57,364 bases of DNA, filler included, from Trichosphaerium sp. ATCC 40318 (GCA_038496445.1; 3 parts of 3 records of this genome joined end to end with filler, not necessarily neighbours in it); one strand, 5' to 3'; positions 1-21,080 are shown, numbered from the whole stretch's first letter. The notes: generated by a model not told the origin, from the letters alone. A program made the numbers and translations.

Positions 1-1763
1 ACTTTTGCTGTTGCTGTTAAAGCGCTCGCAGTCCAAACAACGACACAGCTGAGAGGGACAAGGTTTAGACGAGAATTTATTCTCTGACAAAACCCCCCCT
101 ACTCTTTTTCATCGCCCGACCAGGCATAAATGGCTTCGCTCAAACGCAAGGTCAGTTTAGGCTTCGGCCGCTATGCCACCCACCAGCATCCTGGAATTGG
201 GCTTTAAAAAAACAAAAAACAACACTTTACCAAGTGCGACGCTCAAGTCTCATTTTTTACTAAGTATGAACAATATCCTAAGATGCAAGTCAGAGTGAAA
301 ACTCATGTTCTTCATTAAGGGAATAAAAACATTGTGAACTACATAAAAGTATTTTTTGAGATCAAACTTGAGTTAGTCTTCACACTAATAAAGAACACAC
401 GATTACTAGGTGCGTACGGGGTAGAGAGTGTGGTATCAGCGAGGAGTGAAATCTTTTGACCTGATCCAAACTACCCGAAGCGAAGGCGCTCTGCAAGGGC
501 GTGGCCGGTGATCTAGAACGATGGTGGAGGGAGCGAAGCGGATTAGAGACCCGTGTAGTCTCCACAGTAAACGATGCCGACTGAATGGGCGCCGGGCAAA
601 CCAAGGCTCGGGGCCCGTTCCCACGGGAAACCGAAGTAATCGGGCCCAGGGGGGAAGTATGGTCGCAAGGCTGAAACTTAAAGGCATTGACGGAGCAACA
701 CCACCAGGCTCTGGAGGCTGCGGCTCAATTTGACTCAACGCGCGACAACTTACCGGGATCGGACGCTCTAAGGGGACGAACAGACTGAAGGGTCTTTTCC
801 GAGTTAGCTAACGGTGGTGCATGGTCGTTTTAGGCTCGTGGACTTATCTGTCAGGTTTATTCCGATAACGGGCGAGATCGCTACTGTCACATTGATTCCC
901 CCGCCTCGTGCGGGACCCCTGTGCAGGACTGACGGCGAAAAGTCGTAAGAAGCGGCGGCTATAACAGATCCGGGATGCCCCCAGATATTCCGGGCCGCAC
1001 GCGGCCTACACTGCTTAGTTCAACGGGTTCCTGGGCCGAACAGGCATCCGGGCAAGCCCTGAAACCGCCAGAACACTTCTTCACGACAGCGAGTTAAACC
1101 TCAGATTTTATTATCTAAATACGACTACACTTAAACGCACCTTCGGAAACTACCACCTTCAAAACAAAGTCTGTCCTGAACCTAATATAAAGAGTTAACC
1201 CCCTCGTCGAGGCTTTTTAGGAAGTTAAATTCCTTTAATGTTAAGACGAGAAGCGCTGTTAGATGAAATTTATATCTTTGGACTTTGTTTCCTTAGTATA
1301 AACATTGAAAGAGCTGTGGATCGTTTCAAATTAACAAACAAAAGGTTTCTTCTTCACTTAAATGCTTTGACCTGGAAGATTATATCTTTACCAAGGCAAA
1401 CTTTATTATGAAGTAAGTTTCTGCAATGTTCATAAAAAATACATGAAAGCGCACCGTGTGGTCGATTTGGATGTTAAGTGTGCTCAATGCTGCTTCTCCG
1501 AAAAGACACATGCGTGCTTAGGGACTGGTTGCTGTAACTGTAGCCACGAACGCGGAATGCCTCGTACAGGTGTGTCATCAACGCACCTGGAATCTGTCCC
1601 TGTTGCTTGTACACACCGCCCGTCGCATCGACCGATGTGGGTGCGAGTGAGACCAGGGGGGACGACCGGCTTGCCGGTTATCGAACCTGCTCGAACTTGC
1701 GCTCATAAAGGATGATGAAGTCGTAACAAGGTTTCAGTAGGTGAACCTGCTGAAGGATCAATA
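1..1763 (+). rRNA. SSU (18S-like) rRNA, unit A, 5'-truncated by window edge
   Basis: Conserved motifs GAAACTTAAAGGCATTGACGG (673-693), TTGTACACACCGCCCGTCG (~1607-1625) and GAAGTCGTAACAAGG...GGTGAACCTGCTGAAGGATCA (1717-1760); AU-rich inserts at ~35-400 and ~1068-1511. Confidence 0.97.
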
Positions 1764-2000
1764 CTATTGGTATTAAACCCTTAGAAGCAATTAAACCAAC
1801 TTTTAACCAAGTTTAAAAGAAAAATTGGAGTATCAGCTCTGGTTTGGTAAATCTAATCTTACCTCGGTAAGTGAAGATGTAATCATCCTCTGCTGTGGTG
1901 ATATCTTGTATATCTGCCAGCTCCACAACTGCCATTTTGGCAAAACAAAACACAGTCGTGGCACGACTATAAAGAACGTCAAGATTTTCGAAAGAAACCA
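1764..2000 (+). other. ITS1, unit A
   Basis: AU-rich spacer between the SSU 3' end and 5.8S, built of short hairpins (CTTACC-TC-GGTAAG, TGCCA-TTT-TGGCA). Confidence 0.8.
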
Positions 2001-2168
2001 AACCTTGTCGGTGAACGGTTAGGCACCTCCCCCGAAGAAGGCCATGGATCACTATGAAACCAGCCACCGGAATCGCTCTCATCTGAAGGTGGCATTGCCG
2101 AATGCCTCAGGCCGCGTTCTGTATTCTCACGAATCACAGGCAAAGGAGCGTGACTCAGCGACGCCAGC
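2001..2168 (+). rRNA. 5.8S rRNA (divergent), unit A
   Basis: GC-rich island between two AU-rich spacers; AACCTTGTCGGTGAACGGTTAGGC..CCGAAGAAGGCC aligns by eye with the 5.8S 5' region (CGATGAAGAACG equivalent); ends approximate. Confidence 0.8.
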
Positions 2169-2366
2169 AAAACAAACACTAAATTTATTTGGTGCTGCGT
2201 ATGGTGTACACACTTAATCTTCTAAAAAAAGAAAGTGGTTGCCACAACTAATTAAATAAATTGCCGGAAGTGACGTTCCTCCAGAACTCATGCCTAGCTT
2301 ACTTAAGCGAAGCTTCAGAGGGAAGGTTGGTTCTATACATTGAAAGCATATAAAAAAACACAACTT

Positions 2367-4983
2367 GCGTCCTGAGTTACACTTGGCGACCTGCCTAAGT
2401 TAAGCATATCATTGGGGCAGAGGAAAGGAAACCAAAAGGGACTCCCTGAGTAGCGGCGAGCGAAAGGGGACAAGCTCAAGCCTGAATCCGAGCCTAGCAT
2501 CGGAGTTGTGGGCTAAGGCGTGGTGGCTCTTCCAGACGTTGACGGGAATTACGCACGAGTCGTAGCCGTAGAGGGTGCGAGCCCCGTACGCTGTCAACCG
2601 AGGAAATAGAGTCCCATCGTCCAGGAGTAGTATGGTTTGGCCGTGCCATACGAAGTTACCGGGAGGTTACCCGGCAAGGCTAAGTATCGGGAGGTGGCCG
2701 ATAGCGCACCAGTACCGTGAGGGAAGACTGAAACAGCACTCCTCGATAGAGGGTTAAAAGACCCGAAGCCGGCAAGGGTACAAATGGCACGGAGTACGTA
2801 GGTGCCCTGCACCTAATCTGCACATGGCAGACGCTCTTGTAGCGAGGGAAAAGCGACCGGGGCCTTGTGCCCTGGAAGATTATAATGAAACAAAACGTCG
2901 AGGGGAAGGTAATAGAAGTGACCAACACAAAAAAGTCATACTGGCTAATTGTGCTGTCCACACCATCCTACAAGCTGAAAAGCATAAAAACGTGGGTTTG
3001 GTTGAAAGGACATCAAAAAGCACTTTTTCAAACCTTTAAATGGCGTTGGTTCACTGAAATCACTGAAACCTCCGAATGTACGTCTTCTTCCGAAAGGAAC
3101 GAAGTTCGTCATTCATCGTCCACAACCTCAATGAGGCTCTATGCCCTTATTGGGCCATGGCCTCCGTGTATCCCGTCTTGAAACACGGATCAAGGAGTTC
3201 GCCGAGCGTGCGAGGGTGAGAGATCAAACCTCCAACCCGCACAGAAATGAAGCCAAGGATAAGCTCCTAGGCCGTCAAGTTCTTTATAAAAAAACAAACG
3301 TATTACATTACATGTATAAGTTTGCAAAGATCGACATAAAAAACCGACTATGCTATTATCATGTTTTTATGTTACGCAAGTAATTAAAAACACGTCATAC
3401 CAAAGTAGATACACTTTGCCATCTCCGGCGTTGTTCTCTTGGCAGGCGATAGTACGTTGGGCGATACCCGAAAGGTAGCGATCTATACCCGAAAAGGGGG
3501 AAGGCGGGAGAAATCCCGCTGGACGCCCGTAGCGTTGCTGACGTGCAAATCGCTCGCCGGACATTGGGTATAGGGGCGAGAGACCAAACGAGCTGCCAAC
3601 GTAGCTGGTACCGTTCGAAGTATCCCTAAGGATAGAGGGGGTCCGTGACGCCGGTCTCGTCTCGTAGAGCCACTGGAAAGAGGTATCGGAGGCCAAAGTT
3701 GCCATCGACCTATTATCAAACACATAAGAGGCGACCGATCACAGGCCGAATGGCTGTGATCACCGAGACGGTGGACCCCTATTGGGCCGGTCTTGATAAG
3801 CAGGACTGACGAGACGGTTTTAAACGCGAGCAGCAGCAAAGGCGCCCGAATAGGCAGTAACCAAGACAACGAAGGCGGTGTTCCAGTTTAGACAGCTGGA
3901 AGGTGGACATGGAAGTCGTCATCCTCTAAGGAGTGAGTAACTTCTCACCAGCCGAATTGGGACGCGCCGAAAATGGATGGCGCTAAACTGCCTTAGCCGC
4001 CGCTGCGCGATCGCCCCGGCTCGGCCCAGGGTGCGGTAGGACGGCGTGCTGGTGGCGTAGAAGGGGGGCGGTGGCGTCCACCCGGAGCCACCAGCAGTGA
4101 TGATCTTGGTGGTAGTAGCAATTGGAGCCTGGTGAAACAGTGTTTATCACAGCCAGGTCGCCCAAGTGGGGAAGGGTTTCGCGGTGATGGCATTCAGCTG
4201 CGAGTTAGCCGGTCCTAAGCCAGCTCCTAATAGAGTATACTGTTTGATGCTGGCAGACGACACTTTGTTCGGACGAAACTTTACTGTTTCTGATGACTGG
4301 TGGAAGTCTGCGATGCTTTCAACTCGGCGAAAGGCAACCTGGTGAGTAATCCAGGGCATGGGTAAGGAGGATGCATTTGCTTTAGAAGTGGCAACACTGA
4401 GAGAGAGAGCGCACGCGAGCAACCACACTTCTGCGGGGCCTTCTCCCGCGCCTAAGCTATTCGAGGGAAACTCCCCGGAGCCACGTAAAGCGGCGAAGGG
4501 AAAGAGTCGAGGGTAGCTAATGGGAAAGCACTTTTGCTTTCTAGGGGTGTTGGTGAGCTCGTTCTCACGAGGCTGCTCCTCTCCGAAGCCGACACTTTCG
4601 GGTGTTCAGTGTCCTCCAGGCTCATACCGTACCGAAAACCGCATCAGGTCCCCTAGGTTAGTCACCTCTGGCGCTGCACGGTGTAAACGGCGTAAGGGAA
4701 GTCGGCATACGCGGCCCGTAACTTCGGGAAAAGGGCTGGCTCTGCTGACCGGGACCCGGGACGACGTGCGTCTGCGCTACTTCAGTGTAGCCCCTTCGGG
4801 AATGGCGCACAGTCCCTGCAAAGAGGTCCACAAGCGGATCATGGCGGAACTCTCAGAAGCTTAGAGAACCCAACTGTTTACTTAAAACTTAGCCCTTTGA
4901 TACCTCCTCTGAGGTCTGACAAAGGGTGACTCCTGCCCAGTGCTTTGAAAGTTGCGGTGCTTAATTTCACCCAAGCACGGGTT

Positions 4984-5033
<50 letters not shown>

Positions 5034-5750
5034 GTAACTAATGACGCGCATGAATGGATGAATGAGGTTCTCGCTGTCCCTACGCCGACCGTGGCGAAAC
5101 CACAGAGTCGCGAACGGGCGACTTTTCTACCAGCGGGGAAAGAAGACCCTGTTGAGTTTGACTCTCACCACGCTTAGGGGCTTGGCACTGGAGGTATAGG
5201 GTAGGAAGTAGTTTTTTACGAAAGGTGTAACACTTCTACTCCGGAGGTCGGGCCCCAGACGCATTCAAAACGGGCGAAAGCGCCTGCCTCTTCGGAGGAC
5301 GTGGCGCTGCTCGAACCATACAAGTCGGTTCTTAGGATGAGGCGGGCCCAATCGAAAGTGCGGATTACCTTCCAATTTCGGAACTTTGACAAGCATTAAG
5401 GCGGACAGCGCGTGGCCGGGAGTTTGGCTGGGGCGGCACATCCGCTATAGGGTAACACGGATGACCTAAGGGGAGCTCAGTGGGGACAGAAACCCCACGT
5501 AGAGGCCAAGGCTAAAAGCCCCCTTGAGCAAGAGTGGAGCCATCGCTCTTGCACCCTAACGGGAGGCCTAGAGATCCCTCGTGACTAGTCATGTAACCTG
5601 ACACTGGGGTGACAGAAAAATTACCATAGGGATAACTGGCTTGTGGTCGCCAAGCGCTCAGAGCGACGCGACTTTTTGATTCTTCGATGTCGGCTCTTCC
5701 TATCCAGGTGTAGCAGAATGCTCCAAGGGTTGGATTGTTCACCCACTTAC

Positions 5751-5794
<44 letters not shown>

Positions 5795-6200
5795 TTACCC
5801 TACTGGTGGGCCTATTTTATTAACATGCGCGTCGTCGGTAGCGATGCCTCAGTACGAGAGGAACGGGCATCGGTGGCCTCTAGTGTCCGCGGACGTCCGA
5901 GAGGGCGGTTCGCGAAGCCACGCCATTGGGAGTACGGCTGAAGGCCTCTAAAGTCGGAAACCCAGCCGCCAAGAGCCGCGCGGCGACATTGTCGTTGCTG
6001 CGCCTCCTCGAACGAAAGGCTTCGGCCCGCAAAGGTTCTACACTATGGCACAAGTAGCACGTCTTAGCAAACGCCCGCAGGGGCCCCGTAAACCACGGGA
6101 ACTCGAACAGGGTCTTAGGGCATTTACTGTTGTAAGCTAGGGAGTCGCTCAAGCCTTCGGGTGCGACGACCTGCTGAGGCAGAGGCCCGACTAAATTGTA
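2367..6200 (+). rRNA. LSU (28S-like) rRNA, unit A
   Basis: TTAAGCATATCA...GGAAAGGAAACC 5' motif, CCCGTCTTGAAACACGGA (3172), H69 GGCGGGAGTAACTATGACTCTCTTAAGGTAGCC, PTC CTTCGATGTCGGCTCTTCC and GAGCTGGGTTTAGACCGTCGTGAGACAG, sarcin-ricin loop AGTACGAGAGGAAC (5851). Confidence 0.97.
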
Positions 6201-7716
6201 TTCAGAAATATTCATTGCATTCTTCATTTTTTCGTTTTCATGCCCACACTGAGACGTGATTTTTTATCTTTTTAGTATGTTTTGGTCAGCTTTACAAATG
6301 TACAAAGTTTACTTAGTCTTTACCTGCAAGCACCAAAACTTTCTCTATTTTCCGATTTTTATTTAAATCAAAGTTGATTTGTATTGATTTGACTTCATCT
6401 ACATCCTTTTTTGTCACTTGCCTCTAGTTGTGTTGTATGAGAGACCTAATCTGCAATTCATATTCATTTCTAACCAAATAGTATTTTTAAGTTTTCATAA
6501 TATACAATATCACGTGTTTGCAGCAATATTCAATGAACTACACCCAAATAGGAACCTTTTTTCATCAGTATTTTGAACATGTATTTTGTACCAAGTTGTT
6601 GGTTATCAAGTGATGGTTTTTTCAATTGTTGGTGTTGGTATTGATGAGAATGTACTTGTATAATGCATTTTTAAAATTGATCAGTCTTTAATATAATAAC
6701 AAGATTGAAACTAATTAAGCTTTTTTTTTACAAAAGCCATTTTTTTGTCACCAAATACAGCTTTATTTTTCACCAAATTGTCTTGTTTTTGCCAAAAAAA
6801 TGAGCAAATATGAGGCATTGCCTTGTAATGTTGGGCTTTGAAGCCTCATATTTGGGCCAAATAGCAAGCAACTGGTTTACTAATTAGCCTTAAAATAGCC
6901 TGCATTGTTCAGGGCTGAAACTCAGCTAGGCATTGCCTTAAAAAATGATGCATATTTCTAACATTTGGCATCAGATGGCAAAATCAAGGCATTTGCATTT
7001 GGCAATGCCCAATAAAATAAGGCATTTTTACAAAAAGGCAATGCCTTCATCAAAAAGGCATTAATACCAGGCATTTTTGGGCATCTTTTGGCATTGCATA
7101 AAATCAGGTAATGCCTTGTATTGCATTTTTTGGCATTGCATAAAATCAAGTAATGCCCTGTATTGCAAGTACTTTATGCCTTATTATGCCTTATTTTTTT
7201 AAAACAATATATGCCTTGTATTTTAATTGATATATTAGGCATTGCCTATACTATATCATAGGACTGATCACATTAAGGAAGTGGTTTAAGGTAAGTAACA
7301 GTCAAACAACTTTTACACTTTTTTTTTCACATCACCTACTGACGTTTTATATAGATAGGCACCTAGCGCTCTTAGTAATTCATGAAATTAGACGAAACCA
7401 CTGCCAAACGAACCGCAGCACCCTATTTCACCTATAATAGTAGTAGGAGTGAACTCCGCGATATTTCCAGGACCGCGGAATTCTAACACTACAAGGTAAG
7501 TTTTTTTTTTTTTTTTTTCTACACCATCTCATATTTTCTTTAAGGTTTTTTCAAATGTGGACTTAGGAGTTTTGTGTATTGTATGTGTACTGTATTATAA
7601 AATAAATAGTTGTGTTATTACCTGAAAATGCCCTGGTTTATTAGGCACTGTAGACTATGACAATGCTTTCTTTTTGCCTTCAAAATAAGGCATTGATGCA
7701 TGAGTTCAGTAGTAAA

Positions 7717-8657
7717 CAGGTCTAAAAATTAAAGTGGTATATACCAGTTTTTTTATGGTATATACCACTTTTTTCAACAAAATGGTATATGAACTGGTAT
7801 ATACCATTTTGAAATACCACTTTTTTTAAAAATTAAGTGAATAAAAAAGTGGTATATAGAAGTGGTATATACCACTTTTCATTCACATAATGAGACCTTC
7901 TAAAAATGGTATATAAAGTGGTATATACCACTTTTTTATGGTATGTGGTATATACCACCTTTTTATTGGTATATACCACTTTTATGGTATGCTTCAAGAA
8001 GGTCATTAAGGAGCTTTTTGGTAATGGGTTTTCTTGTTGAACGATCATGGACGTCATACATTGAACGGTGCATAGGGACCTTATTATATCATAGAATCTA
8101 ACCAAACCAAGCTCATTCGGACCGCAGGACCTGATTCCAGTACCAACATTGAGGAAACTATATTGCAGGTATTATACAGACGTTCGTGGGTACCAGACAA
8201 AGTTTTATTTTATTTTCGTTTGATATACATTAACCGACCTCCGTAGGCCTTAGTAATTGATGGATTCAGGTGGAACCACTTTCATTAGGTGCGCAGCATG
8301 GTTTTACAGTAGGCACAGCAAGCTCATGGAGATGGACGAATTTTCCAGACGCCCATAGTAATGTAACTGTAGTGGACATTGTCCAAAACTTGTAACTCAC
8401 AAACTGTGCATTAAATAAAGTGTATTTTCTGGAATTGCAGGTGTACTATAAGTAAGCATAAAGTGGTATATAAGAGTGGTATATACCATGAAAAACTGGT
8501 ATAAAAAAGTGGTATATAACTGGTATATACCTAAAAAAAGTGGTATAAAAAAGTGGTATATTTTTTTTTTTCTGGTGAAAAAAAGTGGTATATTTTCTGT
8601 TTTTATACCTGTTTTTTTTGGTATATTGTTGGTATATTTGGTCAATATACCACCCTG
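7717..8657. repeat. Two arrays of palindromic GTGGTATATACCAC motifs (~7730-7990 and ~8460-8657) flanking a ~450-bp unique core; probable nested TIR element
   Basis: About 20 full or half copies of TGGTATA(TACCA); bounded by AAACAGG...CCTGTTT. Confidence 0.75.
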
Positions 8658-9378
8658 TTTTCCTATGGGAAAAGTAGACGGAAAAACTCTTCCTTAATTC
8701 TCATTGAATTTATATGAAATTCCGTAAGTATTACTCATAGAATTCTTAGAGTATTACTTTTGGAATTGTGTATGTATTTTATATAGAATTCTCTATGTAT
8801 TTTTTATAGCATTTTTTAATGTATTTTTTGTAGATTTCAATAAAAAATACTTTATAAATTACACAAAATATTATTCGATACTTTGGTTCAGATTTAATGC
8901 AAAGTCATTTTATTTATTGATCATTACAAAATACAAACATCCTAAATAATACGTACAAGTTAAATACATCGTGTCTTCATAAACGAAAGAAGTAATTTGA
9001 TTGCATTTGGTTTTGAGAGCCTGAACAATAATTAATGCGTTTGTAAACGCTAAATTAAGAACGCGTAGGGTTTTTTGATAAATTAAGTGGAAATAAGCTT
9101 TAAAAACAACGTACTTGGAGTTAATGCTTTAAATACATTCTTTAATGGTGTAATAAGGCTGTTGCAATGCTTTAATCATCCTAAAACAGATAAGTAAGAG
9201 ATATTTATGTTTAAGTGATTTTCCAAACCACCTAAAATGCATTCTCTGTTACTTTTTGGATTAACGCACTTTAACCTGTACCATTGGTTTTTTCACCTTT
9301 AATAATAGCATGTGGATATTGTTTGCTAGAAAAACCTATGTACCTAAGGTGTCAATGGTTTTTTGCAAATATAAAACT

Positions 9379-9447
9379 AAACCCTAACCCTAACTTAATT
9401 TCTACTTTCATAAACCTCAACCCTAGCCCTAACCCTAACCCTAACTA
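9379..9447. repeat. Interstitial telomere-type (CCCTAA)n repeats
   Basis: AACCCTAACCCTAAC (9380-9394) and AACCCTAGCCCTAACCCTAACCCTAAC (9419-9445). Confidence 0.8.
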
Positions 9448-10324
9448 AATTAGTACATTATTTGGTGGATTTTGTACAATAATTCTGAAAATTCCGTATT
9501 TAAGGGAATATTATGGTAATTCTATCAAAAATCCTGCCATAAAAAAAAATAAAAATAAGAATTCTTCACAAATTACCTTAAAAATCCCTAAAACAAAGGA
9601 ATTTAGTGGGATTTATATCCAAAATCCCGTTTTCATTTTACCACTGTTATGCTCTAATTTGAAGGCATAATTCCTTAAAATATGCAGGCAAAACCATTGC
9701 AATCTTGTGTACCAGATGCAAGCATTTTTCATCAAATATAAGGCATTTTTGGAGCAAAAAATAAGGCATTGCCTTGTATTTGCCTTTTTGAATGAGGCAA
9801 AAACTAGGCATTGTCCAAAAATGCCTTGTTGAGTTTCAGCCCTGTTGGTCCAATAATGCCTCAATTTTTGTGCAACAATAAGGCATTTTTGCCCTCAATT
9901 TTTGGGCATAACCCAGGCGCCATATACTCATAAAACAAGGCTTTATATAAACATACAATAGTGATTCATTTATTAAAGTACAGTACACAAAACACAAAAA
10001 ACTGCAATGTCCTCCATGTAAAAAAACCCCTTTAGCTTAAAAAAAAAACTAACAAATTATTGGTATAATTTTCACAGACTGGAAAAATGGTTTAAAGTAC
10101 CTCTACTCCAATTGTAGGTGACTTTGGGTGCTGTGGTTCAAATATGAGTGGTTTTGTTAGAATTCATAAAATACTAAAAGTGTGGTGCCATAGTCTATAT
10201 AAAACATCAATAGTAAATGAAAAAAAAAAGTTTGAGAAGTGTTGGTATGGTGGAAACTTACCTTAAACCAATGTATCCTTAATGTACAATGTGTATGCAA
10301 CCAATACCTAATTGGTGCTTGTAA

Positions 10325-10692
10325 ATTTAAGGCTGGCAATGCATAAAAAAACTAAGGCAAGCATTGTCTAAAAAACAAGGCATTGCAACAATTAAGACAT
10401 TGCCCAACAAAGTTTTATTTCAATGCCTGATTTTACAAAAATTTCTTTGTATTTAAGACAAAACCTTGTTTAGTTTCAACCTTGTAAATACTCACAATAC
10501 AGAGCATTATTTGATTTTATTGCCAAAAAATGCCTTGTTTTAATGTCTTTTTGATGGAAGCATTGCCTTTTTGTAAAAATGCCTACTTTATTGAACAGTG
10601 CCAAATGCAAATGCCTTGATTTTGCTATTTGATGCCAAATGTTAGGAATATGCATCATTTTTAAAGCAATGTTTACTTGAGTTTCAGCCTTG
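10325..10692 (-). mobile_element. Degenerate inverted copy of the left arm of the 6910-9844 element
   Basis: Reverse complement reads CAAGGCTGAAACTCA...TGATGCATATTCCTAACATTTGGCATC...AAGGCATTTGCATTTGGCA, matching 6910-7085 with about 19 substitutions by manual alignment. Confidence 0.8.
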
Positions 10693-12548
10693 AACAAAAT
10701 ATTCCAAACTAACCTTCACTTATTGCCACTTTAAAGTTTGGTTTGTTTAGTGGATTGTAAGCATTTTCTTTCATTTTTAATAGCAAAATAAAAGAGTGTT
10801 TTTCTTTTATACTCAGCACATTTTTGTTGGTTTGAAACAAACTGTAAATTCTTTCAAAATACATAACCTTTGTTTGTGCAAAAGCTTTTATGTTTGTTTT
10901 ACAAGTAAAATATCTCCATCCAACCTTTACAAATAAAAATTAAACATTATAAGCTTTATGTTTAATTTTTATTTTAATATTTAATTTTACAACAACATTG
11001 GTTGGCTGAAAAATGAGTAATTTATCAATTGGTTTTCCTGTTTTGTCTTTAATTCTTACTTTACCAAATTGGTGTGTAGTGGTACAATAGATTTAAAAAC
11101 ATGCAATATTGTTTAAACACAATGCATTTGTTATGTGGTTGGTAAATCAAATAATTTTGTTAAAACAGCTTTATTGATAACCACTTTGGAATTTAAATTT
11201 ATCAAAAAAATCCCATAAAACCCCAAAACTAGTACTTTTATAAAGCAACTGTGCTGTTTCAAGCTTGAATCATTGTATAATGTCCAAGTTAGAATAAAAG
11301 TATCTAACAACATGACTATTAGTAAATCAAACATTGTTGTTGTACTTTTTATAAACACATTCACTTTTTACAATCACTTTTATACCTACACTTTCTCTGT
11401 TACAACAACCTCCAAACATGCAACAAAAAACATTGGTTATCAATTGTAATCATTTGAACTTAATAATTCTTAAAACTTTAACACAAAGAGAATCTTACAC
11501 AAATTTGTCAGTTTATCTCCACTTCCAATCTGTAAATATTTCCTATGTTTAGTTTGTATCACTGTGTTAGTATGTGTTTGAGCAAGTATAAAGCTAAGTT
11601 TAGTCTCCACTTAAGGTTGAGATATTGGAAAAGCAATTTATGAAACCATTTTATCTGTTGTGATGGTGGGTGTGTCATAATTGCATTAACTTATTTAGAA
11701 TACTCATTTTTCTTTTGATGTTGTCATCCATTTTATAATCAAAGTTCCATGATTAAAATTCATTAATGAGAAGTAAAATAATGTATTAACATGCTTCATT
11801 GTTTTTGATGACTGTTTGTTACTTAAATGTTGTTTAAATTGATTTTTTTGTCATATAAACCAATCTTTTTCAAACTCGATAAAACATCCCTTTCATTTAA
11901 TGCTACAACTGCACAAATAAACCCATTGATGATGTCCATGGCTCCATTTGTTTCATCACAAAAAGTACCCCACTCAGCCTTTTTTTTTGACCAATCTTAC
12001 AGCTAAAAGAAAGAGATTTTTTTGTTCAATGAAATTGTTAAATTAAACAGGTACTTTGATTTCCACATGTAAAGTAACACAAGAGTTATAGTTTGTATCA
12101 TGTAAAGAACTTCATTTGGTGTGTAAATCAATCAAAGACACCAAATAAGTTATAAAAGCACATGTATCATCACAAAAATTGTTGTCTTTGCTTTTGCCAA
12201 ACACATTAAGGTGTTATAAACATGATAACAATGCTTGTTATGAATTTTTTGGAATATTTTTTTAAACATATTAATACAGAATCTACACAAATTTTCTATT
12301 TTTGTTTGAGTAAAATGCTTTGTATTATTGAATAATGTGAATGAGCAAAAAAGATTTTACAATTTATTTAAAATAAAAATGTTGCAGAGATTGACAAAAA
12401 TGTTTGTAAACTCTTTTACTGCAATTGAAATTTTAAAAAAAAATTCAAACATTTGCTTTCAAACTTTGTTTTTGGGTAGATAAAAAATTACATCTCAGCA
12501 CATGGAGATGAAAAAGGAGAAGAATGAATAACACTGAAGATTTCTGAA

Positions 12549-12954
12549 TACAATTTAGTCGGGCCTCTGCCTCAGCAGGTCGTCGCACCCGAAGGCTTGA
12601 GCGACTCCCTAGCTTACAACAGTAAATGCCCTAAGACCCTGTTCGAGTTCCCGTGGTTTACGGGGCCCCTGCGGGCGTTTGCTAAGACGTGCTACTTGTG
12701 CCATAGTGTAGAACCTTTGCGGGCCGAAGCCTTTCGTTCGAGGAGGCGCAGCAACGACAATGTCGCCGCGCGGCTCTTGGCGGCTGGGTTTCCGACTTTA
12801 GAGGCCTTCAGCCGTACTCCCAATGGCGTGGCTTCGCGAACCGCCCTCTCGGACGTCCGCGGACACTAGAGGCCACCGATGCCCGTTCCTCTCGTACTGA
12901 GGCATCGCTACCGACGACGCGCATGTTAATAAAATAGGCCCACCAGTAGGGTAA

Positions 12955-12998
<44 letters not shown>

Positions 12999-13715
12999 GT
13001 AAGTGGGTGAACAATCCAACCCTTGGAGCATTCTGCTACACCTGGATAGGAAGAGCCGACATCGAAGAATCAAAAAGTCGCGTCGCTCTGAGCGCTTGGC
13101 GACCACAAGCCAGTTATCCCTATGGTAATTTTTCTGTCACCCCAGTGTCAGGTTACATGACTAGTCACGAGGGATCTCTAGGCCTCCCGTTAGGGTGCAA
13201 GAGCGATGGCTCCACTCTTGCTCAAGGGGGCTTTTAGCCTTGGCCTCTACGTGGGGTTTCTGTCCCCACTGAGCTCCCCTTAGGTCATCCGTGTTACCCT
13301 ATAGCGGATGTGCCGCCCCAGCCAAACTCCCGGCCACGCGCTGTCCGCCTTAATGCTTGTCAAAGTCCCGAAATCGGAAGGTAGTCCGCACTTTCGATTG
13401 GGCCCGCCTCATCCTAAGGACCGACTTGTATGGTTCGAGCAGCGCCACGTCCTCCGAAGAGGCAGGCGCTTTCGCCCGTTTTGAATGCGTCTGGGGCCCG
13501 ACCTCCGGAGTAGAAGTGTTACACCTTTCGTAAAAAACTACTTCCTACCCTATACCTCCAGTGCCAAGCCCCTAAGCGTGGTGAGAGTCAAACTCAACAG
13601 GGTCTTCTTTCCCCGCTGGTAGAAAAGTCGCCCGTTCGCGACTCTGTGGTTTCGCCACGGTCGGCGTAGGGACAGCGAGAACCTCATTCATCCATTCATG
13701 CGCGTCATTAGTTAC

Positions 13716-13765
<50 letters not shown>

Positions 13766-16379
13766 AACCCGTGCTTGGGTGAAATTAAGCACCGCAACTT
13801 TCAAAGCACTGGGCAGGAGTCACCCTTTGTCAGACCTCAGAGGAGGTATCAAAGGGCTAAGTTTTAAGTAAACAGTTGGGTTCTCTAAGCTTCTGAGAGT
13901 TCCGCCATGATCCGCTTGTGGACCTCTTTGCAGGGACTGTGCACCGTTCCCGAAGGGGCTACACTGAAGTAGCGCAGATGCACGTCGTCCCGGGTCCCGG
14001 TCAGCAGAGCCAGCCCTTTTCCCGAAGTTACGGGCCGCGTATGCCGACTTCCCTTACGCCGTTTACACCGTGCAGCGCCAGAGGTGACTAACCTAGGGGA
14101 CCTGATGCGGTTTTCGGTACGGTATGAGCCTGGAGGACACTGAACATCCGAAAATGTCGGCTTCGGAGAGGAGCAGCCTCGTGAGAACGAGCTCACCAAC
14201 ACCCCTAGAAAGCAAAAGTGCTTTCCCATTAGCTACCCTCGACTCTTTCCCTTCGCCGCTTTACGTGGCTCCGGGGAGTTTCCCTCGAATAGCTTAGGCG
14301 CGGGAGAAGGCCCCGCAGAAGTGTGGTTGCTCGCGTGCGCTCTCTCTCTCAGTGTTGCCACTTCTAAAGCAAATGCATCCTCCTTACCCATGCCCTGGAT
14401 TACTCACCAGGTTGCCTTTCGCCGAGTTGAAAGCATCGCAGACTTCCACCAGTCTTCAGAACAGTAAAGTTCATCTGAACAAAGTGTCGTCTGCCAGCAT
14501 CAAACAGTATACTCTATTAGGAGCTGGCTTAGGACCGGCTAACTCGCAGCTGAATGCCATCACCGCGAAACCCTTCCCCACTTGGGCGACCTGGCTGTGA
14601 TAAACACTGTTTCACCAGGCTCCAATTGCTACTACCACCAAGATCATCACTGCTGGTGGCTCCGGGTGGACGCCACCGCCCCCCTTCTACGCCACCAGCA
14701 CGCCGTCCTACCGCACCCTGGGCCGAGCCGGGGCGATCGCGCAGCGGCGGCTAAGGCAGTTTAGCGCCATCCATTTTCGGCGCGTCCCAATTCGGCTGGT
14801 GAGAAGTTACTCACTCCTTAGAGGATGACGACTTCCATGTCCACCTTCCAGCTGTCTAAACTGGAACACCGCCTTCGTTGTCTTGGTTACTGCCTATTCG
14901 GGCGCCTTTGCTGCTGCTCGCGTTTAAAACCGTCTCGTCAGTCCTGCTTATCAAGACCGGCCCAATAGGGGTCCACCGTCTCGGTGACCACAGCCATTCG
15001 GCCTGTGGTCGGTCGCCTCTTATGTGTTTGATAATAGGTCGATGGCAACTTTGGCCTCCGATACCTCTTTCCAGTGGCTCTACGAGACGAGACCGGCGTC
15101 ACGGACCCCCTCTATCCTTAGGGATACTTCGAACGGTACCAGCTACGTTGGCAGCTCGTTTGGTCTCTCGCCCCTATACCCAATGTCCGGCGAGCGATTT
15201 GCACGTCAGCAACGCTACGGGCGTCCAGCGGGATTTCTCCCGCCTTCCCCCTTTTCGGGTATAGATCGCTACCTTTCGGGTATCGCCCAACGTACTATCG
15301 CCTGCCAAGAGAACAACGCCGGAGATGGCAAAGTGTATCTACTTTGGTATGACGTGTTTTTAATTACTTGCGTAACATAAAAACATGATAATAGCATAGT
15401 CGGTTTTTTATGTCGATCTTTGCAAACTTATACATGTAATGTAATACGTTTGTTTTTTTATAAAGAACTTGACGGCCTAGGAGCTTATCCTTGGCTTCAT
15501 TTCTGTGCGGGTTGGAGGTTTGATCTCTCACCCTCGCACGCTCGGCGAACTCCTTGATCCGTGTTTCAAGACGGGATACACGGAGGCCATGGCCCAATAA
15601 GGGCATAGAGCCTCATTGAGGTTGTGGACGATGAATGACGAACTTCGTTCCTTTCGGAAGAAGACGTACATTCGGAGGTTTCAGTAATTTCAGTGAACCA
15701 ACGCCATTTAAAGGTTTAAAAGTGCTTTTTGATGTCCTTTCAACCAAACCCACGTTTTTATGCTTTTCAGCTTGTAGGATGGTGTGGACAGCACAATTAG
15801 CCAGTATGACTTTTTTGTGTTGTCACTTCTATGTTACCTTCCCCTCGACGTTTTGTTTCATTATAATCTTCCAGGGCACAAGGCCCCGGTCGCTTTTCCC
15901 TCGCTACAAGAGCGTCTGCCATGTGCAGATTAGGTGCAGGGCACCTACGTACTCCGTGCCATTTGTACCCTTGCCGGCTTCGGGTCTTTTAACCCTCTAT
16001 CGAGGAGTGCTGTTTCAGTCTTCCCTCACGGTACTGGTGCGCTATCGGCCACCTCCCGATACTTAGCCTTGCCGGGTAACCTCCCGGTAACTTCGTATGG
16101 CACGGCCAAACCATACTACTCCTGGACGATGGGACTCTATTTCCTCGGTTGACAGCGTACGGGGCTCGCACCCTCTACGGCTACGACTCGTGCGTAATTC
16201 CCGTCAACGTCTGGAAGAGCCACCACGCCTTAGCCCACAACTCCGATGCTAGGCTCGGATTCAGGCTTGAGCTTGTCCCCTTTCGCTCGCCGCTACTCAG
16301 GGAGTCCCTTTTGGTTTCCTTTCCTCTGCCCCAATGATATGCTTAACTTAGGCAGGTCGCCAAGTGTAACTCAGGACGC
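12549..16379 (-). rRNA. LSU rRNA, unit B
   Basis: Near-identical reverse complement of 2367-6200. Confidence 0.97.
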
Positions 16380-16575
16380 AAGTTGTGTTTTTTTATGCTT
16401 TCAATGTATAGAACCAACCTTCCCTCTGAAGCTTCGCTTAAGTAAGCTAGGCATGAGTTCTGGAGGAACATCACTTCCGGCAATTTATTTAATTAGTTGT
16501 GGCAACCACTTTCTTTTTTTAGAAGATTAAGTGTGTACACCATACGCAGCACCAAATAAATTTAGTGTTTGTTTT

Positions 16576-16743
16576 GCTGGCGTCGCTGAGTCACGCTCCT
16601 TTGCCTGTGATTCGTGAGAATACAGAACGCGGCCTGAGGCATTCGGCAATGCCACCTTCAGATGAGAGCGATTCCGGTGGCTGGTTTCATAGTGATCCAT
16701 GGCCTTCTTCGGGGGAGGTGCCTAACCGTTCACCGACAAGGTT
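16576..16743 (-). rRNA. 5.8S rRNA, unit B
   Basis: Reverse complement of 2001-2168. Confidence 0.8.
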
Positions 16744-16980
16744 TGGTTTCTTTCGAAAATCTTGACGTTCTTTATAGTCGTGCCACGACTGTGTTTTGGT
16801 TTGCCAAAATGGCGGTTGTGGAGCTGGCAGATATACAAGATATCACCACAGCAGAGGATGATTATATCTTCACTTACCGAGGTAAGATTGGATTTGCCAA
16901 ACCAGAGCTGATACTCCAATTTTTCTTTTAAACTTGGTTAAAAGTTGGTTTAATTGCTTCTAAGGGTTTAATACCAATAG

Positions 16981-19622
16981 TATTGATCCTTCAGCAGGTT
17001 CACCTACTGAAACCTTGTTACGACTTCATCATCCTTTATGAGCGCAAGTTCGAGCAGGTTCGATAACCGGCAAGCCGGTCGTCCCCCTGGTCTCACTCGC
17101 ACCCACATCGGTCGATGCGACGGGCGGTGTGTACAAGCAACAGGGACAGATTCCAGGTGCGTTGATGACACACCTGTACGAGGCATTCCGCGTTCGTGGC
17201 TACAGTTACAGCAACCAGTCCCTAAGCACGCATGTGTCTTTTCGGAGAAGCAGCATTGAGCACACTTAACATCCAAATCGACCACACGGTGCGCTTTCAT
17301 GTATTTTTTTTATGAACATTGCAGAAACTTGCTTCATAATAAAGTTTGCCTTGGTAAAGATATAATCTTCCAAGTCAAAGCATTTAAGTGAAGAAGAAAC
17401 CTTGTTTGTTAATTTGAAACGATCCACAGCTCTTTCAATGTTTACACTAAGGAGCAAGTCCAAAGATGTAAGTTTTCATCTAACAGCGCTTCTCGTCTTA
17501 ACATTAAAGGAATTTAACTTCCTAAAAAGCCTCGACGAGGGGGTTAACTCTTTATATTAGGTTCAGGACAGACTTTGTTGTGAAGGTGGTAGTTTCCGAA
17601 GGTGCGTTTAAGTGTAGTCGTATTTAGATAATAAAATCTGAGGTTTAACTCGCTGTCGTGAAGAAGTGTTCTGGCGGTTTCAGGGCTTGCCCGGATGCCT
17701 GTTCGGCCCAGGAACCCGTTGAACTAAGCAGTGTAGGCCGCGTGCGGCCCGGAATATCTGGGGGCATCCCGGATCTGTTATAGCCGCCGCTTCTTACGAC
17801 TTTTCGCCGTCAGTCCTGCACAGGGGTCCCGCACGAGGCGGGGGAATCAATGTGACAGTAGCGATCTCGCCCGTTATCGGAATAAACCTGACAGATAAGT
17901 CCACGAGCCTAAAACGACCATGCACCACCGTTAGCTAACTCGGAAAAGACCCTTCAGTCTGTTCGTCCCCTTAGAGCGTCCGATCCCGGTAAGTTGTCGC
18001 GCGTTGAGTCAAATTGAGCCGCAGCCTCCAGAGCCTGGTGGTGTTGCTCCGTCAATGCCTTTAAGTTTCAGCCTTGCGACCATACTTCCCCCCTGGGCCC
18101 GATTACTTCGGTTTCCCGTGGGAACGGGCCCCGAGCCTTGGTTTGCCCGGCGCCCATTCAGTCGGCATCGTTTACTGTGGAGACTACACGGGTCTCTAAT
18201 CCGCTTCGCTCCCTCCACCATCGTTCTAGATCACCGGCCACGCCCTTGCAGAGCGCCTTCGCTTCGGGTAGTTTGGATCAGGTCAAAAGATTTCACTCCT
18301 CGCTGATACCACACTCTCTACCCCGTACGCACCTAGTAATCGTGTGTTCTTTATTAGTGTGAAGACTAACTCAAGTTTTTCTCAAAGTACTTTTTGTAAT
18401 TCACAATGTTTTTATTCCCTTAATGAAGAACATGAGTTTTCACTCAGACTTGCATATCAGGATATTGTTCATACTTAGTAAAAATGAGACTTGAGCGTCG
18501 CACTTGGTAAAGTGTTGTTTTTGTTTTTTTAAAGCCCAATTCCAGGATGCTGGTGGGTGGCATAGCGGCCGAAGCCTAAACTGACCTTGCGTTTGAGCGA
18601 AGCCATTTATGCCTGGTCGGGCGATGAAAAAGAGTCGGGGGGTTTTGTCAAGAATAAACTCCTATCTAAACCTTGTCCCTCTCAGCTGTGTCGTTGTTTG
18701 GACTGCGAGCGCTTTAACAGCAACAGCAAAAGTATAAGCTTTCGGAGTGGGTGTTACCGCGGGTGCTGGCACCCAACTTGTCCTCCAATAGTTTCTCAGG
18801 GCGACATTCAGTTGCCCCTCATTGCGACGACCGGTTTAAATGCCGGCCTCGTTACACTCAGTCGCTGGCTCGATTTGCAATCAATGGCCAAGTTACGCGC
18901 CTGCTGTTACCCGTAAGTACAGGGGCCGTATCTAATGCCCCTTCTCCGGGAACCGAACCCTAGTTCCCCGTTACCCGTCACTGCCGCGGTAGGCCGTTAC
19001 CCTACCGCCTGGCTGATAGGTCGGCCGCCCTTCCGACTCGTGGAGGGGAGAACTCTCAACTTTATATCGATATGATCTTTATGAAAAAGCACATTCAGCG
19101 AAGGATCGAGATTTGAACAATGTTCATTTTTCTTTCACCTAGTTTCACTTGTGTAAACTTTACATTTTTTTTGAAACATGTCTAGTCAGAGAGAACTCCT
19201 CATAACTCCATCGCATGCCCCAACGCCGCTCTTCCCGACGGAGTACGGACGCCGCTTCCTAAGGGGAGGCTGCTTCCCTTGGCGAACCAAGATGGGATCG
19301 GGTGATCGTCCGCTCCTGAGCGTTGGATGCGACCGATGGGTCCTTGCAGCAGAGGGGCCCATCGGCAGCGCTAGGCGCATTACGTATTAGCCGCAGGTTT
19401 CCTTTAATCCCGGTTATCCGCGGGGGAGGCCACGAGTTTTGGTTATAGTGCGTTTAGGAAACAAGTTCCTGTGTGCAAAATGACGTGACCATTATTAGTC
19501 TTGTCGGGTGGGTTACGACCGTTTTAAGGAGCCGTTTGCGGCTCCGAGGATACCTCTTTGCTGAGCTTGCATGGCTTAATCCTTCGAGAAAGCTTATCAC
19601 TCCTGGCAGGCTCAACCAGGTA
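16981..19622 (-). rRNA. SSU rRNA, unit B, complete (~2.64 kb including insertions)
   Basis: Starts TACCTGGTTGAGCCTGCCAG at 19622, then GATTAAGCCATGCA, 530 loop GTGCCAGCACCCGCGGTAA; ends GAAGGATCAATA. Confidence 0.97.
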
Positions 19623-20057
19623 CCTTTTGCATCAGAGTTTTAAAGCAGATAGCTGCATTTAAAATAATTTCTCATCAGACCAAAGGTGGTTGAGGTTTTT
19701 AGGTGGTTTTTTGAAGAATGAACTTCATAAGAAACCATTCAATCTACATTCCTATTCTCTTTCAAGGAGGGTATATAGATGAAGGTCTTTTTGATGAACA
19801 TCACAAATACCTGGTGCCGGACAACATCAGCCTTTCTTGTTGGAGAAGAAGCTGATGTGTCTTGGTTATGGTTTTTATGGCAAGAGATGCTCATAGAGCA
19901 CATTGCCACAACAGCATAGGGTTGTGTCTTTTTAAAGGACTACTTTTCTTGATGAGTCATGCCTATTTTTTACTGAGTAGCCCTTGAGGCATCGTCGGTA
20001 ATAGCTTGCAACTGCATCATTTTTCATACACTCTTTTTTTTTTTTTTCTTTACTATT

Positions 20058-20290
20058 CAAGTACTTGGACTGTGCCTTTCCTTGTAAGCCTTCAAGTTGT
20101 AGCAATTAGCTACACTTGCTTTTATTGATGTACTTGGCTTGTGTGCCTTTCCATCAATTTGCCTTTCACATTTCTGCTTCAGGCTCACATCTATTATTAC
20201 CCAAGTACTTGATACTTGTCTTTCCATTGGGTTTTTGGATGTGAATACAACTTTGTGAATTATTGGAGCACTTTGACTCCTTTCATCCAC
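20058..20290. repeat. Three to four spaced copies of GTACTTG...(C/T)CTTTCC upstream of the SSU
   Basis: Copies near 20058, 20128 and 20202, weaker at 20268; ~70-nt spacing. Confidence 0.55.
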
Positions 20291-20297
20291 CTAAGCA

Positions 20298-21080
20298 TGT
20301 GACTTTGCACATACTTAGAGCTGTATTGCGTATAACTCTGAACTCGATTAGCATTTCTACACCTTTTTTTGGAGTGTTATAATGTTAGAAGAGCATGTGT
20401 TCATACATTGGCAGTTGTTGCCCACTGAGGGCTTCAACTTGATTTACATACTCCTGGTGGTGTGACTTGCACATACTAGGAACTGTGAATTTGCCTAATC
20501 TTGCATTCGATTAGCATTTCTACACCTTGTGTAAAGTGTTCTAATGCTAGAAGAGATAATCAGTTTCGTTCATGACTCGATTAGCATTTCTACACTTCAA
20601 ATGAGTGTTCTAATGCTAGAAGAGCACATGTGGTTTGTACACAAGTGGTTTTGCCCACTAAGGGCTTCAAAACTCATGTTTTCATGTACATTTAACTGTT
20701 TGCCCACTGAGGGCTACAAAGCTTAATACAACATTTGTGTATTGACAATAACTCGATCGACATCTCTTTATCAATCTGTTAATTTAATGACAGAGATAAG
20801 ATGAAGGAGGAGTATAGTGTCTATTTATTGTAAACAATGCATTGGTCCACTGAGACAATGATTTGTAACAAAGTGTATTTCTAATGATACAAGTAACTCG
20901 ATTAACACATTTTACATATGCAAGAAGATACTTTGGGTCACTGACAACATGCCACTATTGAAGTGAAATTGTTGCTTGTGTCATTGAGAGTACAGTTTTC
21001 TTTTTGTTATGATCCCAAGACTCGATTAACATTTCTACGCTCCGTACTAAAACTGCGTTATAATGATAGAAGAGAACTCT
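20298..21080 (-). repeat. rDNA upstream repeats with conserved hairpin ACTCGATTAGCATTTCTACAC-N-GTGTT(C/A)TAATGCTAGAAGAG and TTGCCCACTGAGGGCT motif
   Basis: Full copies near 20342, 20506, 20575 and 21020, half copies near 20751 and 20896; GCCCACT(G/A)AGGGCT near 20420, 20653 and 20702. Confidence 0.8.

What the first reader, a model, noticed from the sequence alone, without database searches (positions are those of the whole stretch)
1..19622. Compact GC-rich rRNA core interrupted by ITS-like AU-rich modules: candidate fragmented cytosolic SSU and LSU rRNA
Seen: the complete SSU is ~2.64 kb, of which about 1 kb lies in four AU-rich blocks (unit B ~19435-19500 and ~19060-19190; unit A ~35-400 and ~1068-1511). 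The remainder is a GC-rich core of roughly 1.6 kb with a short h44. Similar blocks sit in the LSU (~2875-3140, ~3275-3420, ~4230-4320). They share with ITS1/ITS2 their composition, a string-of-short-hairpins design, A/C-rich linkers (AAAACAAA at ~209, 2169 and ~3291) and most of the indels between the two units. They lack GT-AG ends and group I cores. Known: extra excised spacers fragment the LSU in Euglena and trypanosomatids, whereas fragmented cytosolic SSU is rare. Inference: these are either extra internal transcribed spacers giving a multi-piece ribosome, or giant retained expansion segments.
Basis: partly seen in the sequence, partly recalled or inferred. Interest (0 to 1): 0.78.

Follow-up and report, generated by a model that had tools for sequence, protein, structure and literature searches.

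The report
AU-rich expansion segments in long rRNA
The AU-rich blocks in these two inverted rRNA gene copies all sit at the known variable helix tips of the ribosomal RNAs, so they are most likely ordinary, if large, expansion segments and not extra spacers that cut the RNA into pieces; no RNA reads could be examined to prove it.

Summary
The piece holds two nuclear rDNA units arranged tail-to-tail. The arms (1-6269 and 18733-12478) are 98.7% identical and flank a unique 6.2-kb AT-rich centre. The SSU is 2642 nt and the LSU about 3625 nt.

Every block lies at a canonical variable site:
- SSU: h6, V2, V4/ES6S and the tip of h41 (V8/ES10S, 457 nt against 22 in the model).
- LSU: D2/ES7L, D3/ES9L and D7a/ES19L.

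Composition does not separate insert from core. V2 also carries a 62%-GC expansion, and part of the V2 AU block is the normal h10/h11.

The blocks hold nearly all differences between the two units. V8 is predicted to fold as one closed arm, with one compensatory pair between the units. No intron signature was found, and the blocks share no sequence with the spacers.

Best reading: retained expansion segments (about 0.75). A multi-piece SSU remains possible (about 0.07), and an LSU break at D7a or D3 is not excluded (about 0.15). The organism was not identified.

The parts
1..6269 (+). Arm A of the inverted repeat: SSU (5'-cut), ITS1, 5.8S, ITS2, LSU and 277 nt downstream
   Evidence: Self-BLAST pairs 1-6269 with 18733-12478 at 98.71% over 6278 columns.
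1..1763 (+). SSU rRNA gene, unit A, cut by the piece's edge at model position 603
   Evidence: RF01960, 689.7 bits.
30..405 (+). V4 / ES6S region of unit A: 376 nt against about 238 in the model, 40% GC
   Evidence: cmscan alignment. It carries 18 differences between the units, 48 per kb. Fold z -2.6.
1033..1500 (+). V8 / ES10S: apical extension of helix h41 (457 nt where the model has 22), AU-rich
   Evidence: cmscan places it inside the terminal loop of the hairpin at model 1505-1567. The MFE fold is one closed arm, enclosed span 467 of 468, z about -2.4 to -2.5. One compensatory pair between the units, 1273/1298 U-A to C-G.
1764..1999 (+). ITS1 (236 nt, 37% GC)
   Evidence: Lies between the SSU 3' end and the 5.8S.
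2000..2163 (+). 5.8S rRNA, very divergent
   Evidence: RF00002, 27.8 bits, below the gathering score of 42, E 7e-5, full model length.
2164..2366 (+). ITS2 (203 nt, 36% GC)
2367..5992 (+). LSU rRNA gene, unit A (3626 nt)
   Evidence: RF02543, 1726.7 bits, model 1-3401.
2875..3140 (+). AU-rich part of D2 / ES7L
   Evidence: It lies between the conserved motifs at LSU 342 and 806, which are 464 nt apart. From memory, yeast has about 265 nt there. This stretch alone does not reach the Rfam threshold.
3264..3420 (+). D3 / ES9L hairpin insert (156 nt where the model has 15), 29-32% GC
   Evidence: cmscan alignment.
4230..4320 (+). D7a / ES19L insert (about 80 nt extra), the site of the insect 'hidden break'
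   Evidence: cmscan alignment: the insert lies in the hairpin loop at model 1574-1590. D7a as the hidden-break site: PMC2048585, PMC9082867.
6270..12477 (.). Unique AT-rich centre between the 3' ends of the two units (30% GC), with short GTGGTATATACCAC-type repeats and no convincing ORF
12757..16379 (-). LSU rRNA gene, unit B
   Evidence: RF02543, 1724.6 bits.
16981..19622 (-). Complete SSU rRNA gene, unit B (2642 nt)
   Evidence: RF01960, 1029.5 bits, model 1-1831.
19435..19502 (-). About 68-nt AU-rich insert near helix 6, upstream of the conserved GGAUAAC...GCUAAUAC stretch
   Evidence: The helix assignment is my inference from the conserved motif.
19209..19434 (-). GC-rich (62-63%) part of V2: the conserved h7/h8 motif plus a GC-rich expansion of about 170 nt (ES3S region)
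   Evidence: cmscan treated it as part of a 331-nt insertion. Sequence and fold, composition.
19041..19208 (-). AU-rich V2 block, partly homologous to the normal AU-rich h10/h11 region
   Evidence: cmscan aligns it to model 197-290. 35% GC.
19623..21956 (-). Upstream spacer / 5' ETS of unit B, with dispersed 25-50-nt direct repeats (20339-21081)

Best explanation
These are two real, slightly different nuclear rDNA units of a divergent eukaryote with AT-rich spacers, arranged tail-to-tail.

The AU-rich blocks are expansion segments: apical outgrowths of the variable helices. In the SSU they are h6, V2, V4/ES6S and h41/V8/ES10S. In the LSU they are D2/ES7L, D3/ES9L and D7a/ES19L.

They are transcribed with the core and most likely stay in the mature rRNAs as solvent-exposed arms. 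Under this reading the SSU is one molecule of about 2.6 kb.

Their AU-richness would reflect weak constraint in spacers that are themselves 30-40% GC, which is also why they resemble the ITS in composition and collect the indels.

Shown: the positions, sizes and composition of the blocks, the pattern of differences between the units, and the predicted folds.

Inferred: retention in the mature RNA.
For: - Both SSU and LSU align end to end to the eukaryotic Rfam models, with all conserved helices on both sides of each block.
- Each block sits in a terminal loop or variable arm. V8 is 457 nt against 22, inside the h41 hairpin. V4 is 376 nt against about 238. D3 is 156 nt against 15. D7a lies in the hairpin loop at model 1574-1590. 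D2 lies between conserved motifs.
- The whole LSU is only about 225 nt longer than the model.
- Composition does not mark insert against core. V2 carries a 62-63% GC expansion, and the V2 AU block aligns to h10/h11.
- V8 folds as one closed arm and V4 and V8 are more structured than shuffles (z about -2.5), more so than ITS1 (-1.6) or ITS2 (-0.9).
- Differences between the units include compensatory pairs in the V8 arm (1273/1298) and in LSU hairpins (3739/3759, 4770/4806).
[quoted passage not shown] Extra ITSs are described there for 28S only (PMC9082867).
- Long SSU genes with large expansion regions are known, for example Endolimax at 2.58-2.93 kb (PMC12418315, PMC10000153).
Against: - No RNA-level evidence was obtained.
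- Runs on record as RNA hold only 0.46-0.65 of the sampled words of the unit. In one sample this is 0.64 at 10 million letters and 0.65 at 129 million, though two other runs of that sample hold 0.57 and 0.48. This fits strain divergence in the blocks, and it equally fits their absence from RNA.
- By the rule of thumb in PMC9082867 (an expansion more than 4 times longer than in other species is a 'potential novel ITS'), V8 and D3 would qualify.
- Blocks at variable sites, an AU-rich make-up and structure with compensatory changes are all shared by true extra ITSs, so most of the evidence here is not discriminating.
Confidence: 0.75

Rival explanations
1. One or more of the SSU AU-rich blocks (h6, V2, V4, V8) are extra internal transcribed spacers that are cut out. 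The cytosolic SSU rRNA would then be several pieces held together by base pairing.
For: - The blocks match ITS1 and ITS2 in composition.
- They evolve at least as fast as the ITS between the two units: V4 48 events per kb and V8 26 per kb, against 12 per kb for the ITS1-5.8S-ITS2 region as a whole.
- V8 is about 20 times the model length, which meets the '>4x' heuristic of PMC9082867.
- RNA runs hold at most about 0.65 of the words.
Against: - PMC9082867 describes extra ITSs only in 28S. Even Euglena, with its highly fragmented 28S, keeps its 18S expansions.
- Cutting out all of V4 (30-405) or the V2 AU block would remove stretches that align to normal helices.
- V8 is predicted to form a single closed, structured arm with a compensatory change.
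- No read ends or depth drops were observed, because none could be examined.
Confidence: 0.07
2. The SSU is intact, but the LSU carries a 'hidden break' or short extra spacer in D7a/ES19L (4230-4320) or D3/ES9L (3264-3420), giving two non-covalently joined LSU pieces.
For: - D7a/ES19 is the insect hidden-break site. 28S fragmentation has arisen repeatedly in animals, Amoebozoa, dinoflagellates, Plasmodium and Euglenozoa (PMC9082867, PMC2048585).
- The blocks here lie exactly in ES19L and ES9L and are enlarged.
- D7a carries 5 differences between the units within 24 nt.
Against: - The D7a block is short (about 80 extra nt) and only mildly AU-rich (44% GC).
- No known cleavage signal can be scored reliably.
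- No RNA evidence was obtained.
Confidence: 0.15
3. The blocks are introns (group I, group II, spliceosomal or archaeal-type) that are spliced out with religation.
For: They are large discrete insertions relative to the models.
Against: - No intron family matched, at Rfam gathering thresholds over the whole piece or at E up to 5 over 1000-2400, which holds V8. The other blocks were scanned only at gathering thresholds.
- The insertions lie in variable helix tips, not in conserved core sites.
- They vary by small indels between the units, as expansion segments do.
Confidence: 0.01
4. The blocks or the inverted arrangement are assembly artefacts, such as a chimeric or fold-back contig.
For: Inverted duplications can arise from long-read fold-back artefacts. 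Many of the differences are homopolymer-length indels.
Against: - A unique 6.2-kb centre separates the arms.
- Differences between the arms cluster in variable regions and include compensatory pairs, which random errors would not produce.
- Both copies carry the same blocks.
- The stretch is held by 20 runs from 11 studies.
Confidence: 0.02

Closest known systems
Retained SSU expansion segments of euglenids (Euglena gracilis 18S)
   Same: Large expansions in the variable regions of 18S, in a divergent lineage. [quoted passage not shown]
   Different: The Euglena LSU is split by about 12-13 extra ITSs. Here the LSU region is only about 3.6 kb, with little room for spacers. The organism here is unidentified, and the metagenome contigs fetched by the shared 530-loop 19-mer are only about 70-80% alike in the core.
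Long SSU rRNA genes of Archamoebae (Endolimax about 2.58 kb, E. carassius 2934 bp, Iodamoeba >2.5 kbp)
   Same: Similar SSU length, 'large expansion and hypervariable regions', variation between copies within a genome including homopolymer length, and occurrence in wastewater and animal guts (PMC12418315, PMC10000153).
   Different: Published Endolimax nana primers do not match: AU15F gives no hit at 3 mismatches or fewer, AU8R has 3 mismatches and IO_LimaxF has 6. This is therefore not E. nana, and no archamoebid affinity was shown.
Extra ITSs and hidden breaks in 28S rRNA (kinetoplastids, euglenids, the protostome D7a/ES19 break, the rodent ES15 break)
   Same: AU-rich or variable inserts at expansion-segment sites. 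One block here lies in D7a/ES19L (PMC9082867, PMC2048585).
   Different: Those are proven by RNA termini. Here no RNA evidence exists, and the described cases concern the LSU, not the SSU.
Inverted or palindromic rDNA, for example the Entamoeba histolytica rDNA episome (the inverted-unit detail is from my own knowledge; episomal circles: PMC10285105 abstract)
   Same: Two rDNA units in inverted orientation separated by AT-rich repeat-bearing spacers.
   Different: Circularity and copy number could not be tested. The SSU here is far longer and richer in GC.

Membership tests
Eukaryotic rRNA expansion segments (retained) | The insert lies at the tip or arm of a helix known to vary in length (ES or V/D site), with conserved core helices intact on both sides | tested here: met
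   cmscan alignments place the blocks in V2, V4, h41/V8, D3/ES9L and D7a/ES19L. D2 was placed by conserved motifs.
Eukaryotic rRNA expansion segments (retained) | Present in the mature rRNA as one covalent chain with the core | not testable with these tools
All runs found are kept as contigs only.
Eukaryotic rRNA expansion segments (retained) | Folds as a helical extension of the host helix, with structure kept through compensatory change | tested here: inconclusive
   V8 is predicted as one closed arm, z about -2.4 to -2.5. There is a single compensatory pair between the units, 1273/1298. The pair comes from an MFE prediction on only two sequences.
Additional ITS / fragmented rRNA | The sequence is absent from mature rRNA, with new 5' and 3' termini at its borders | not testable with these tools
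   No reads could be laid.
Additional ITS / fragmented rRNA | Position matches a known extra-ITS or hidden-break site | tested here: inconclusive
   Met for the D7a/ES19L block only (PMC9082867, PMC2048585). The source read here describes extra ITSs only in 28S, so the SSU blocks have no precedent in it.
Additional ITS / fragmented rRNA | The expansion is more than 4 times longer than in other species (heuristic of PMC9082867 for a 'potential' ITS) | tested here: met
   V8 is 457 nt against 22 and D3 is 156 against 15, relative to the Rfam consensus. This is a heuristic only, and retained expansions also satisfy it.
Group I / group II introns in rDNA | A conserved catalytic core detectable by covariance model, and insertion in a conserved core site | tested here: not met
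   No intron family was found at gathering thresholds over the piece or at E up to 5 over 1000-2400. The insertions lie in variable loops.
Entamoeba-type inverted rDNA episome | Two inverted rDNA units on a circular extrachromosomal molecule | tested here: inconclusive
   Inverted units are shown. Circularity is not testable because the contig ends inside SSU unit A.

The most novel reading that the evidence does not exclude
The cytosolic SSU rRNA of this organism is made in pieces. The AU-rich h6, V2, V4 and/or V8 blocks would be extra transcribed spacers removed during maturation. The 40S RNA would then be about 2-5 fragments (roughly 120, 226, 350, 630 and 250 nt if all are cut), held together by the stems that flank each block.
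Probability: 0.07. Interest if true: 0.8.

Novelty: new member of a known kind. Interest (0 to 1): 0.25.

Why it matters
If the blocks are retained, this is one more protist with a long SSU (2.64 kb). Its unusual point is a 450-nt arm on h41, which could be of modest interest for comparing ribosome structures and as a caution for 18S barcoding and alignment. If the SSU blocks were excised, this would be a multi-piece cytosolic SSU. The source read here describes extra ITSs only in 28S, so that would be a real surprise for ribosome biogenesis. The evidence here makes the ordinary reading much the more likely.

Tried and rejected
RNA evidence.

Earlier findings.

Fetching RNA-derived contigs through mechanical ORFs in the rDNA.
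- Five exact look-ups and one homology search found nothing.

Relatives for covariation.
- The one metagenome scan used the unusual 530-loop 19-mer. It returned 120 contigs, all only about 70-80% alike in core regions and none sharing the GTAACACC variant.
- Two genome-contig scans and two viral-contig scans were blank.

Identity of the organism.
- Endolimax nana was rejected by its primers.
- Chilomastix was rejected by TN117.
- The qPCR primers for Amoeboaphelidium protococcarum FD01 found nothing at up to 6 mismatches.
- Mastigamoeba balamuthi was rejected by its genome GC of 60.7%, against 30-40% in the spacers here.
- A full-text search for six oligos from this SSU found nothing relevant.

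Other checks.
- Sequence similarity between the blocks and the ITS or IGS: none beyond a 14-mer.
- Protein genes in the spacers: none convincing.
- cmscan on 2780-3480 alone gave no hit, so D2 had to be placed by conserved motifs recalled from memory.


Full report
WHAT IS IN THE PIECE

cmscan against Rfam finds four rRNA genes:
- a 5'-cut SSU at 1-1763 (+)
- an LSU at 2367-5992 (+)
- an LSU at 16379-12757 (-)
- a complete SSU at 19622-16981 (-, 2642 nt, whole model)

A self-comparison shows one inverted repeat, 1-6269 against 18733-12478, at 98.71% identity. The piece is therefore two rDNA units transcribed towards each other. A unique 6.2-kb centre (6270-12477) separates them. It is 30% GC, with short palindromic GTGGTATATACCAC-type repeats and no convincing ORF. 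The repeat ends at 18733 only because the contig starts inside SSU unit A, so the arms are probably longer.

The 5.8S lies at 2000-2163. It scores only 27.8 bits, below Rfam's threshold of 42. This gives ITS1 at 1764-1999 and ITS2 at 2164-2366. The low bit scores of all three rRNAs point to a divergent lineage: SSU 1029 bits over 1831 model positions and LSU 1727 bits over 3401.

CHECK OF THE OBSERVATION

Along the SSU, 950 of 2642 nt lie in segments of 34-39% GC, and the remaining 1692 nt are 57.7% GC. The LSU blocks are 41%, 29% and 44% GC. ITS1 and ITS2 are 36-37%.

The two units differ by 73 events:
- 18 in V4 (48 per kb)
- 12 in V8 (26 per kb)
- 7 in the ITS1-5.8S-ITS2 region (12 per kb)
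- 1 in 919 nt of SSU core

Of the 18 indels inside rRNA genes, 17 fall in the blocks.

Some side claims are weak. AAAACAAA occurs 15 times in the piece. V8 is predicted as one arm, not a string of hairpins. h44 is only 14 nt shorter than the consensus.

WHERE THE BLOCKS LIE

SSU:
- About 68 nt lie near helix 6 (19435-19502).
- V2 holds a 62-63% GC stretch (19209-19434). It contains the conserved GGAUAAC...GCUAAUAC motif plus a GC-rich expansion of about 170 nt.
- V2 also holds an AU block (19041-19208) that cmscan aligns to the normally AU-rich h10/h11.
- V4/ES6S is 376 nt against about 238 in the model (30-405 in unit A).
- The largest insert, 457 nt where the model has 22, lies inside the terminal loop of the h41 hairpin (V8/ES10S, 1033-1500).
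- V7 is 28 nt shorter than the model.

LSU:
- D2/ES7L is about 200 nt longer than in yeast. This comparison uses motif positions recalled from memory.
- D3/ES9L has 156 nt where the model has 15.
- D7a/ES19L has about 80 extra nt.
- ES27L is short.
- The whole LSU exceeds the model by only about 225 nt.

Every block is thus a canonical expansion-segment site. Composition does not cleanly separate insert from core.

WHAT THE BLOCKS LOOK LIKE

- V8 folds as one closed arm (enclosed span 467 of 468 nt), with z about -2.4 to -2.5 against shuffles. V4 gives z -2.6, against -1.6 for ITS1 and -0.9 for ITS2.
- Between the units there are compensatory double changes: LSU hairpins 3739/3759 (U-A to C-G) and 4770/4806 (G-C to A-U), and the V8 arm 1273/1298 (U-A to C-G). 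A further pair, 4595/4602, is unpaired in the MFE fold and is compensatory only in my own reading of the sequence as a hairpin.
- These pairs show that the two copies are real paralogues and not the product of sequencing noise. They also suggest that structure in the variable arms is under some selection.
- The blocks share no sequence with the ITS or IGS beyond a 14-mer.
- No intron family matches.

WHY EXCISION COULD NOT BE TESTED

The stretch is held by 20 public runs from 11 studies, including wastewater, an invertebrate metagenome and transcriptomic libraries. All are kept as contigs only.

The only RNA-side numbers are word shares of 0.46-0.65 in the runs on record as RNA. In one sample the share is 0.64 at 10 million letters and 0.65 at 129 million, though two other runs of that sample hold 0.57 and 0.48. 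Absence of the blocks from RNA would produce this pattern, and so would strain divergence concentrated in the blocks. It decides nothing.

Attempts to fetch RNA-derived contigs through ORFs, and to find close relatives in metagenomes, genomes or viral contigs, all failed.

INTERPRETATION

The anatomy is what retained expansion segments look like in an organism with AT-rich spacers.

The literature read here supports this. Extra ITSs that fragment rRNA are described for 28S in kinetoplastids, euglenids, protostomes, some rodents, Plasmodium, Amoebozoa and dinoflagellates. The 18S expansions of euglenids are not removed in E. gracilis (PMC9082867). D7a is the insect hidden-break site (PMC2048585). 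From my own memory, not checked here because the paper was not held, the 2.7-kb SSU of Phreatamoeba (Mastigamoeba) balamuthi was shown by northern blot to be one molecule.

My estimates:
- Retained expansion segments: about 0.75.
- A break confined to the LSU at D7a or D3: about 0.15.
- A multi-piece SSU: about 0.07.
- Introns or an assembly artefact: about 0.03 together.

Most of the positive evidence is shared by true extra ITSs: a position at a variable site, AU-richness and structure. The weights therefore rest largely on precedent, on the modest LSU length, and on the fact that the V2 and V4 blocks contain homologues of normal helices.

IDENTITY OF THE ORGANISM

The organism was not established.
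- SSU length, copy-to-copy homopolymer variation and habitat resemble Endolimax or Iodamoeba (PMC12418315, PMC10000153). However, E. nana primers do not match.
- The Chilomastix primer TN117 does not match, and the A. protococcarum FD01 primers found nothing at up to 6 mismatches.
- M. balamuthi is excluded by its genome GC.
- The 530 loop reads CAGCACCCGCGGTAAC. The first 19 nt of this variant occur in more than 120 metagenome contigs, but none of them is close.

VERDICT

This is a real and correctly described compositional pattern. It is best explained as ordinary, though large, expansion segments in an inverted pair of rDNA units. The fragmented-SSU idea is unsupported but remains testable with a single RNA-coverage plot.

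Noticed in passing
window 1-6269 / 12478-18733, centre 6270-12477: The two rDNA units are tail-to-tail (convergent), with a unique 6.2-kb AT-rich centre. The repeat is cut only by the contig edge. The pair could be part of a palindromic or circular rDNA element.
   Followed up: partly
window 2000-2163: The 5.8S rRNA scores only 27.8 bits, below Rfam's gathering score of 42, although it matches the full model length. Together with the low SSU and LSU scores, this marks a very divergent lineage.
   Followed up: partly
window 18745-18770 (SSU 530 loop): The universally conserved 530 loop reads GTGCCAGCACCCGCGGTAACACC instead of ...CAGCAGCCGCGGTAATTCC. The CACCCGCGG part is shared by more than 120 metagenome contigs, but none has the GTAACACC part.
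   Followed up: yes
window 3739/3759, 4770/4806, 4595/4602, 1273/1298: Paired compensatory differences between the two units in hairpin stems (U-A to C-G, G-C to A-U). They show structural selection on the variable arms and that the two copies are real. The 4595/4602 pair rests on my own reading of the hairpin, not on the MFE fold.
   Followed up: partly
window 19209-19434: A GC-rich (62-63%) expansion of about 170 nt in V2 sits between two AU-rich blocks, so expansions of opposite composition coexist in one rRNA.
   Followed up: partly
window 20339-21081 and 7735-8560: The upstream spacer carries four dispersed copies of a motif pair of about 27-29 nt (GATTAGCATTTCTACAC / TAATGNTAGAAGAG). These may be promoter or enhancer repeats. 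The central spacer carries clusters of the palindrome GTGGTATATACCAC.
   Followed up: no
Sequencing-run result for window 12700-19700: Runs of one transcriptomic sample hold 0.64 of the unit's sampled words at 10 million letters and 0.65 at 129 million; two other runs of that sample hold 0.57 and 0.48. The missing third could be the ITS plus divergent blocks, or blocks absent from RNA. This is unresolved.
   Followed up: no
They lie in conserved LSU core. They were left out of all later searches.
   Followed up: no
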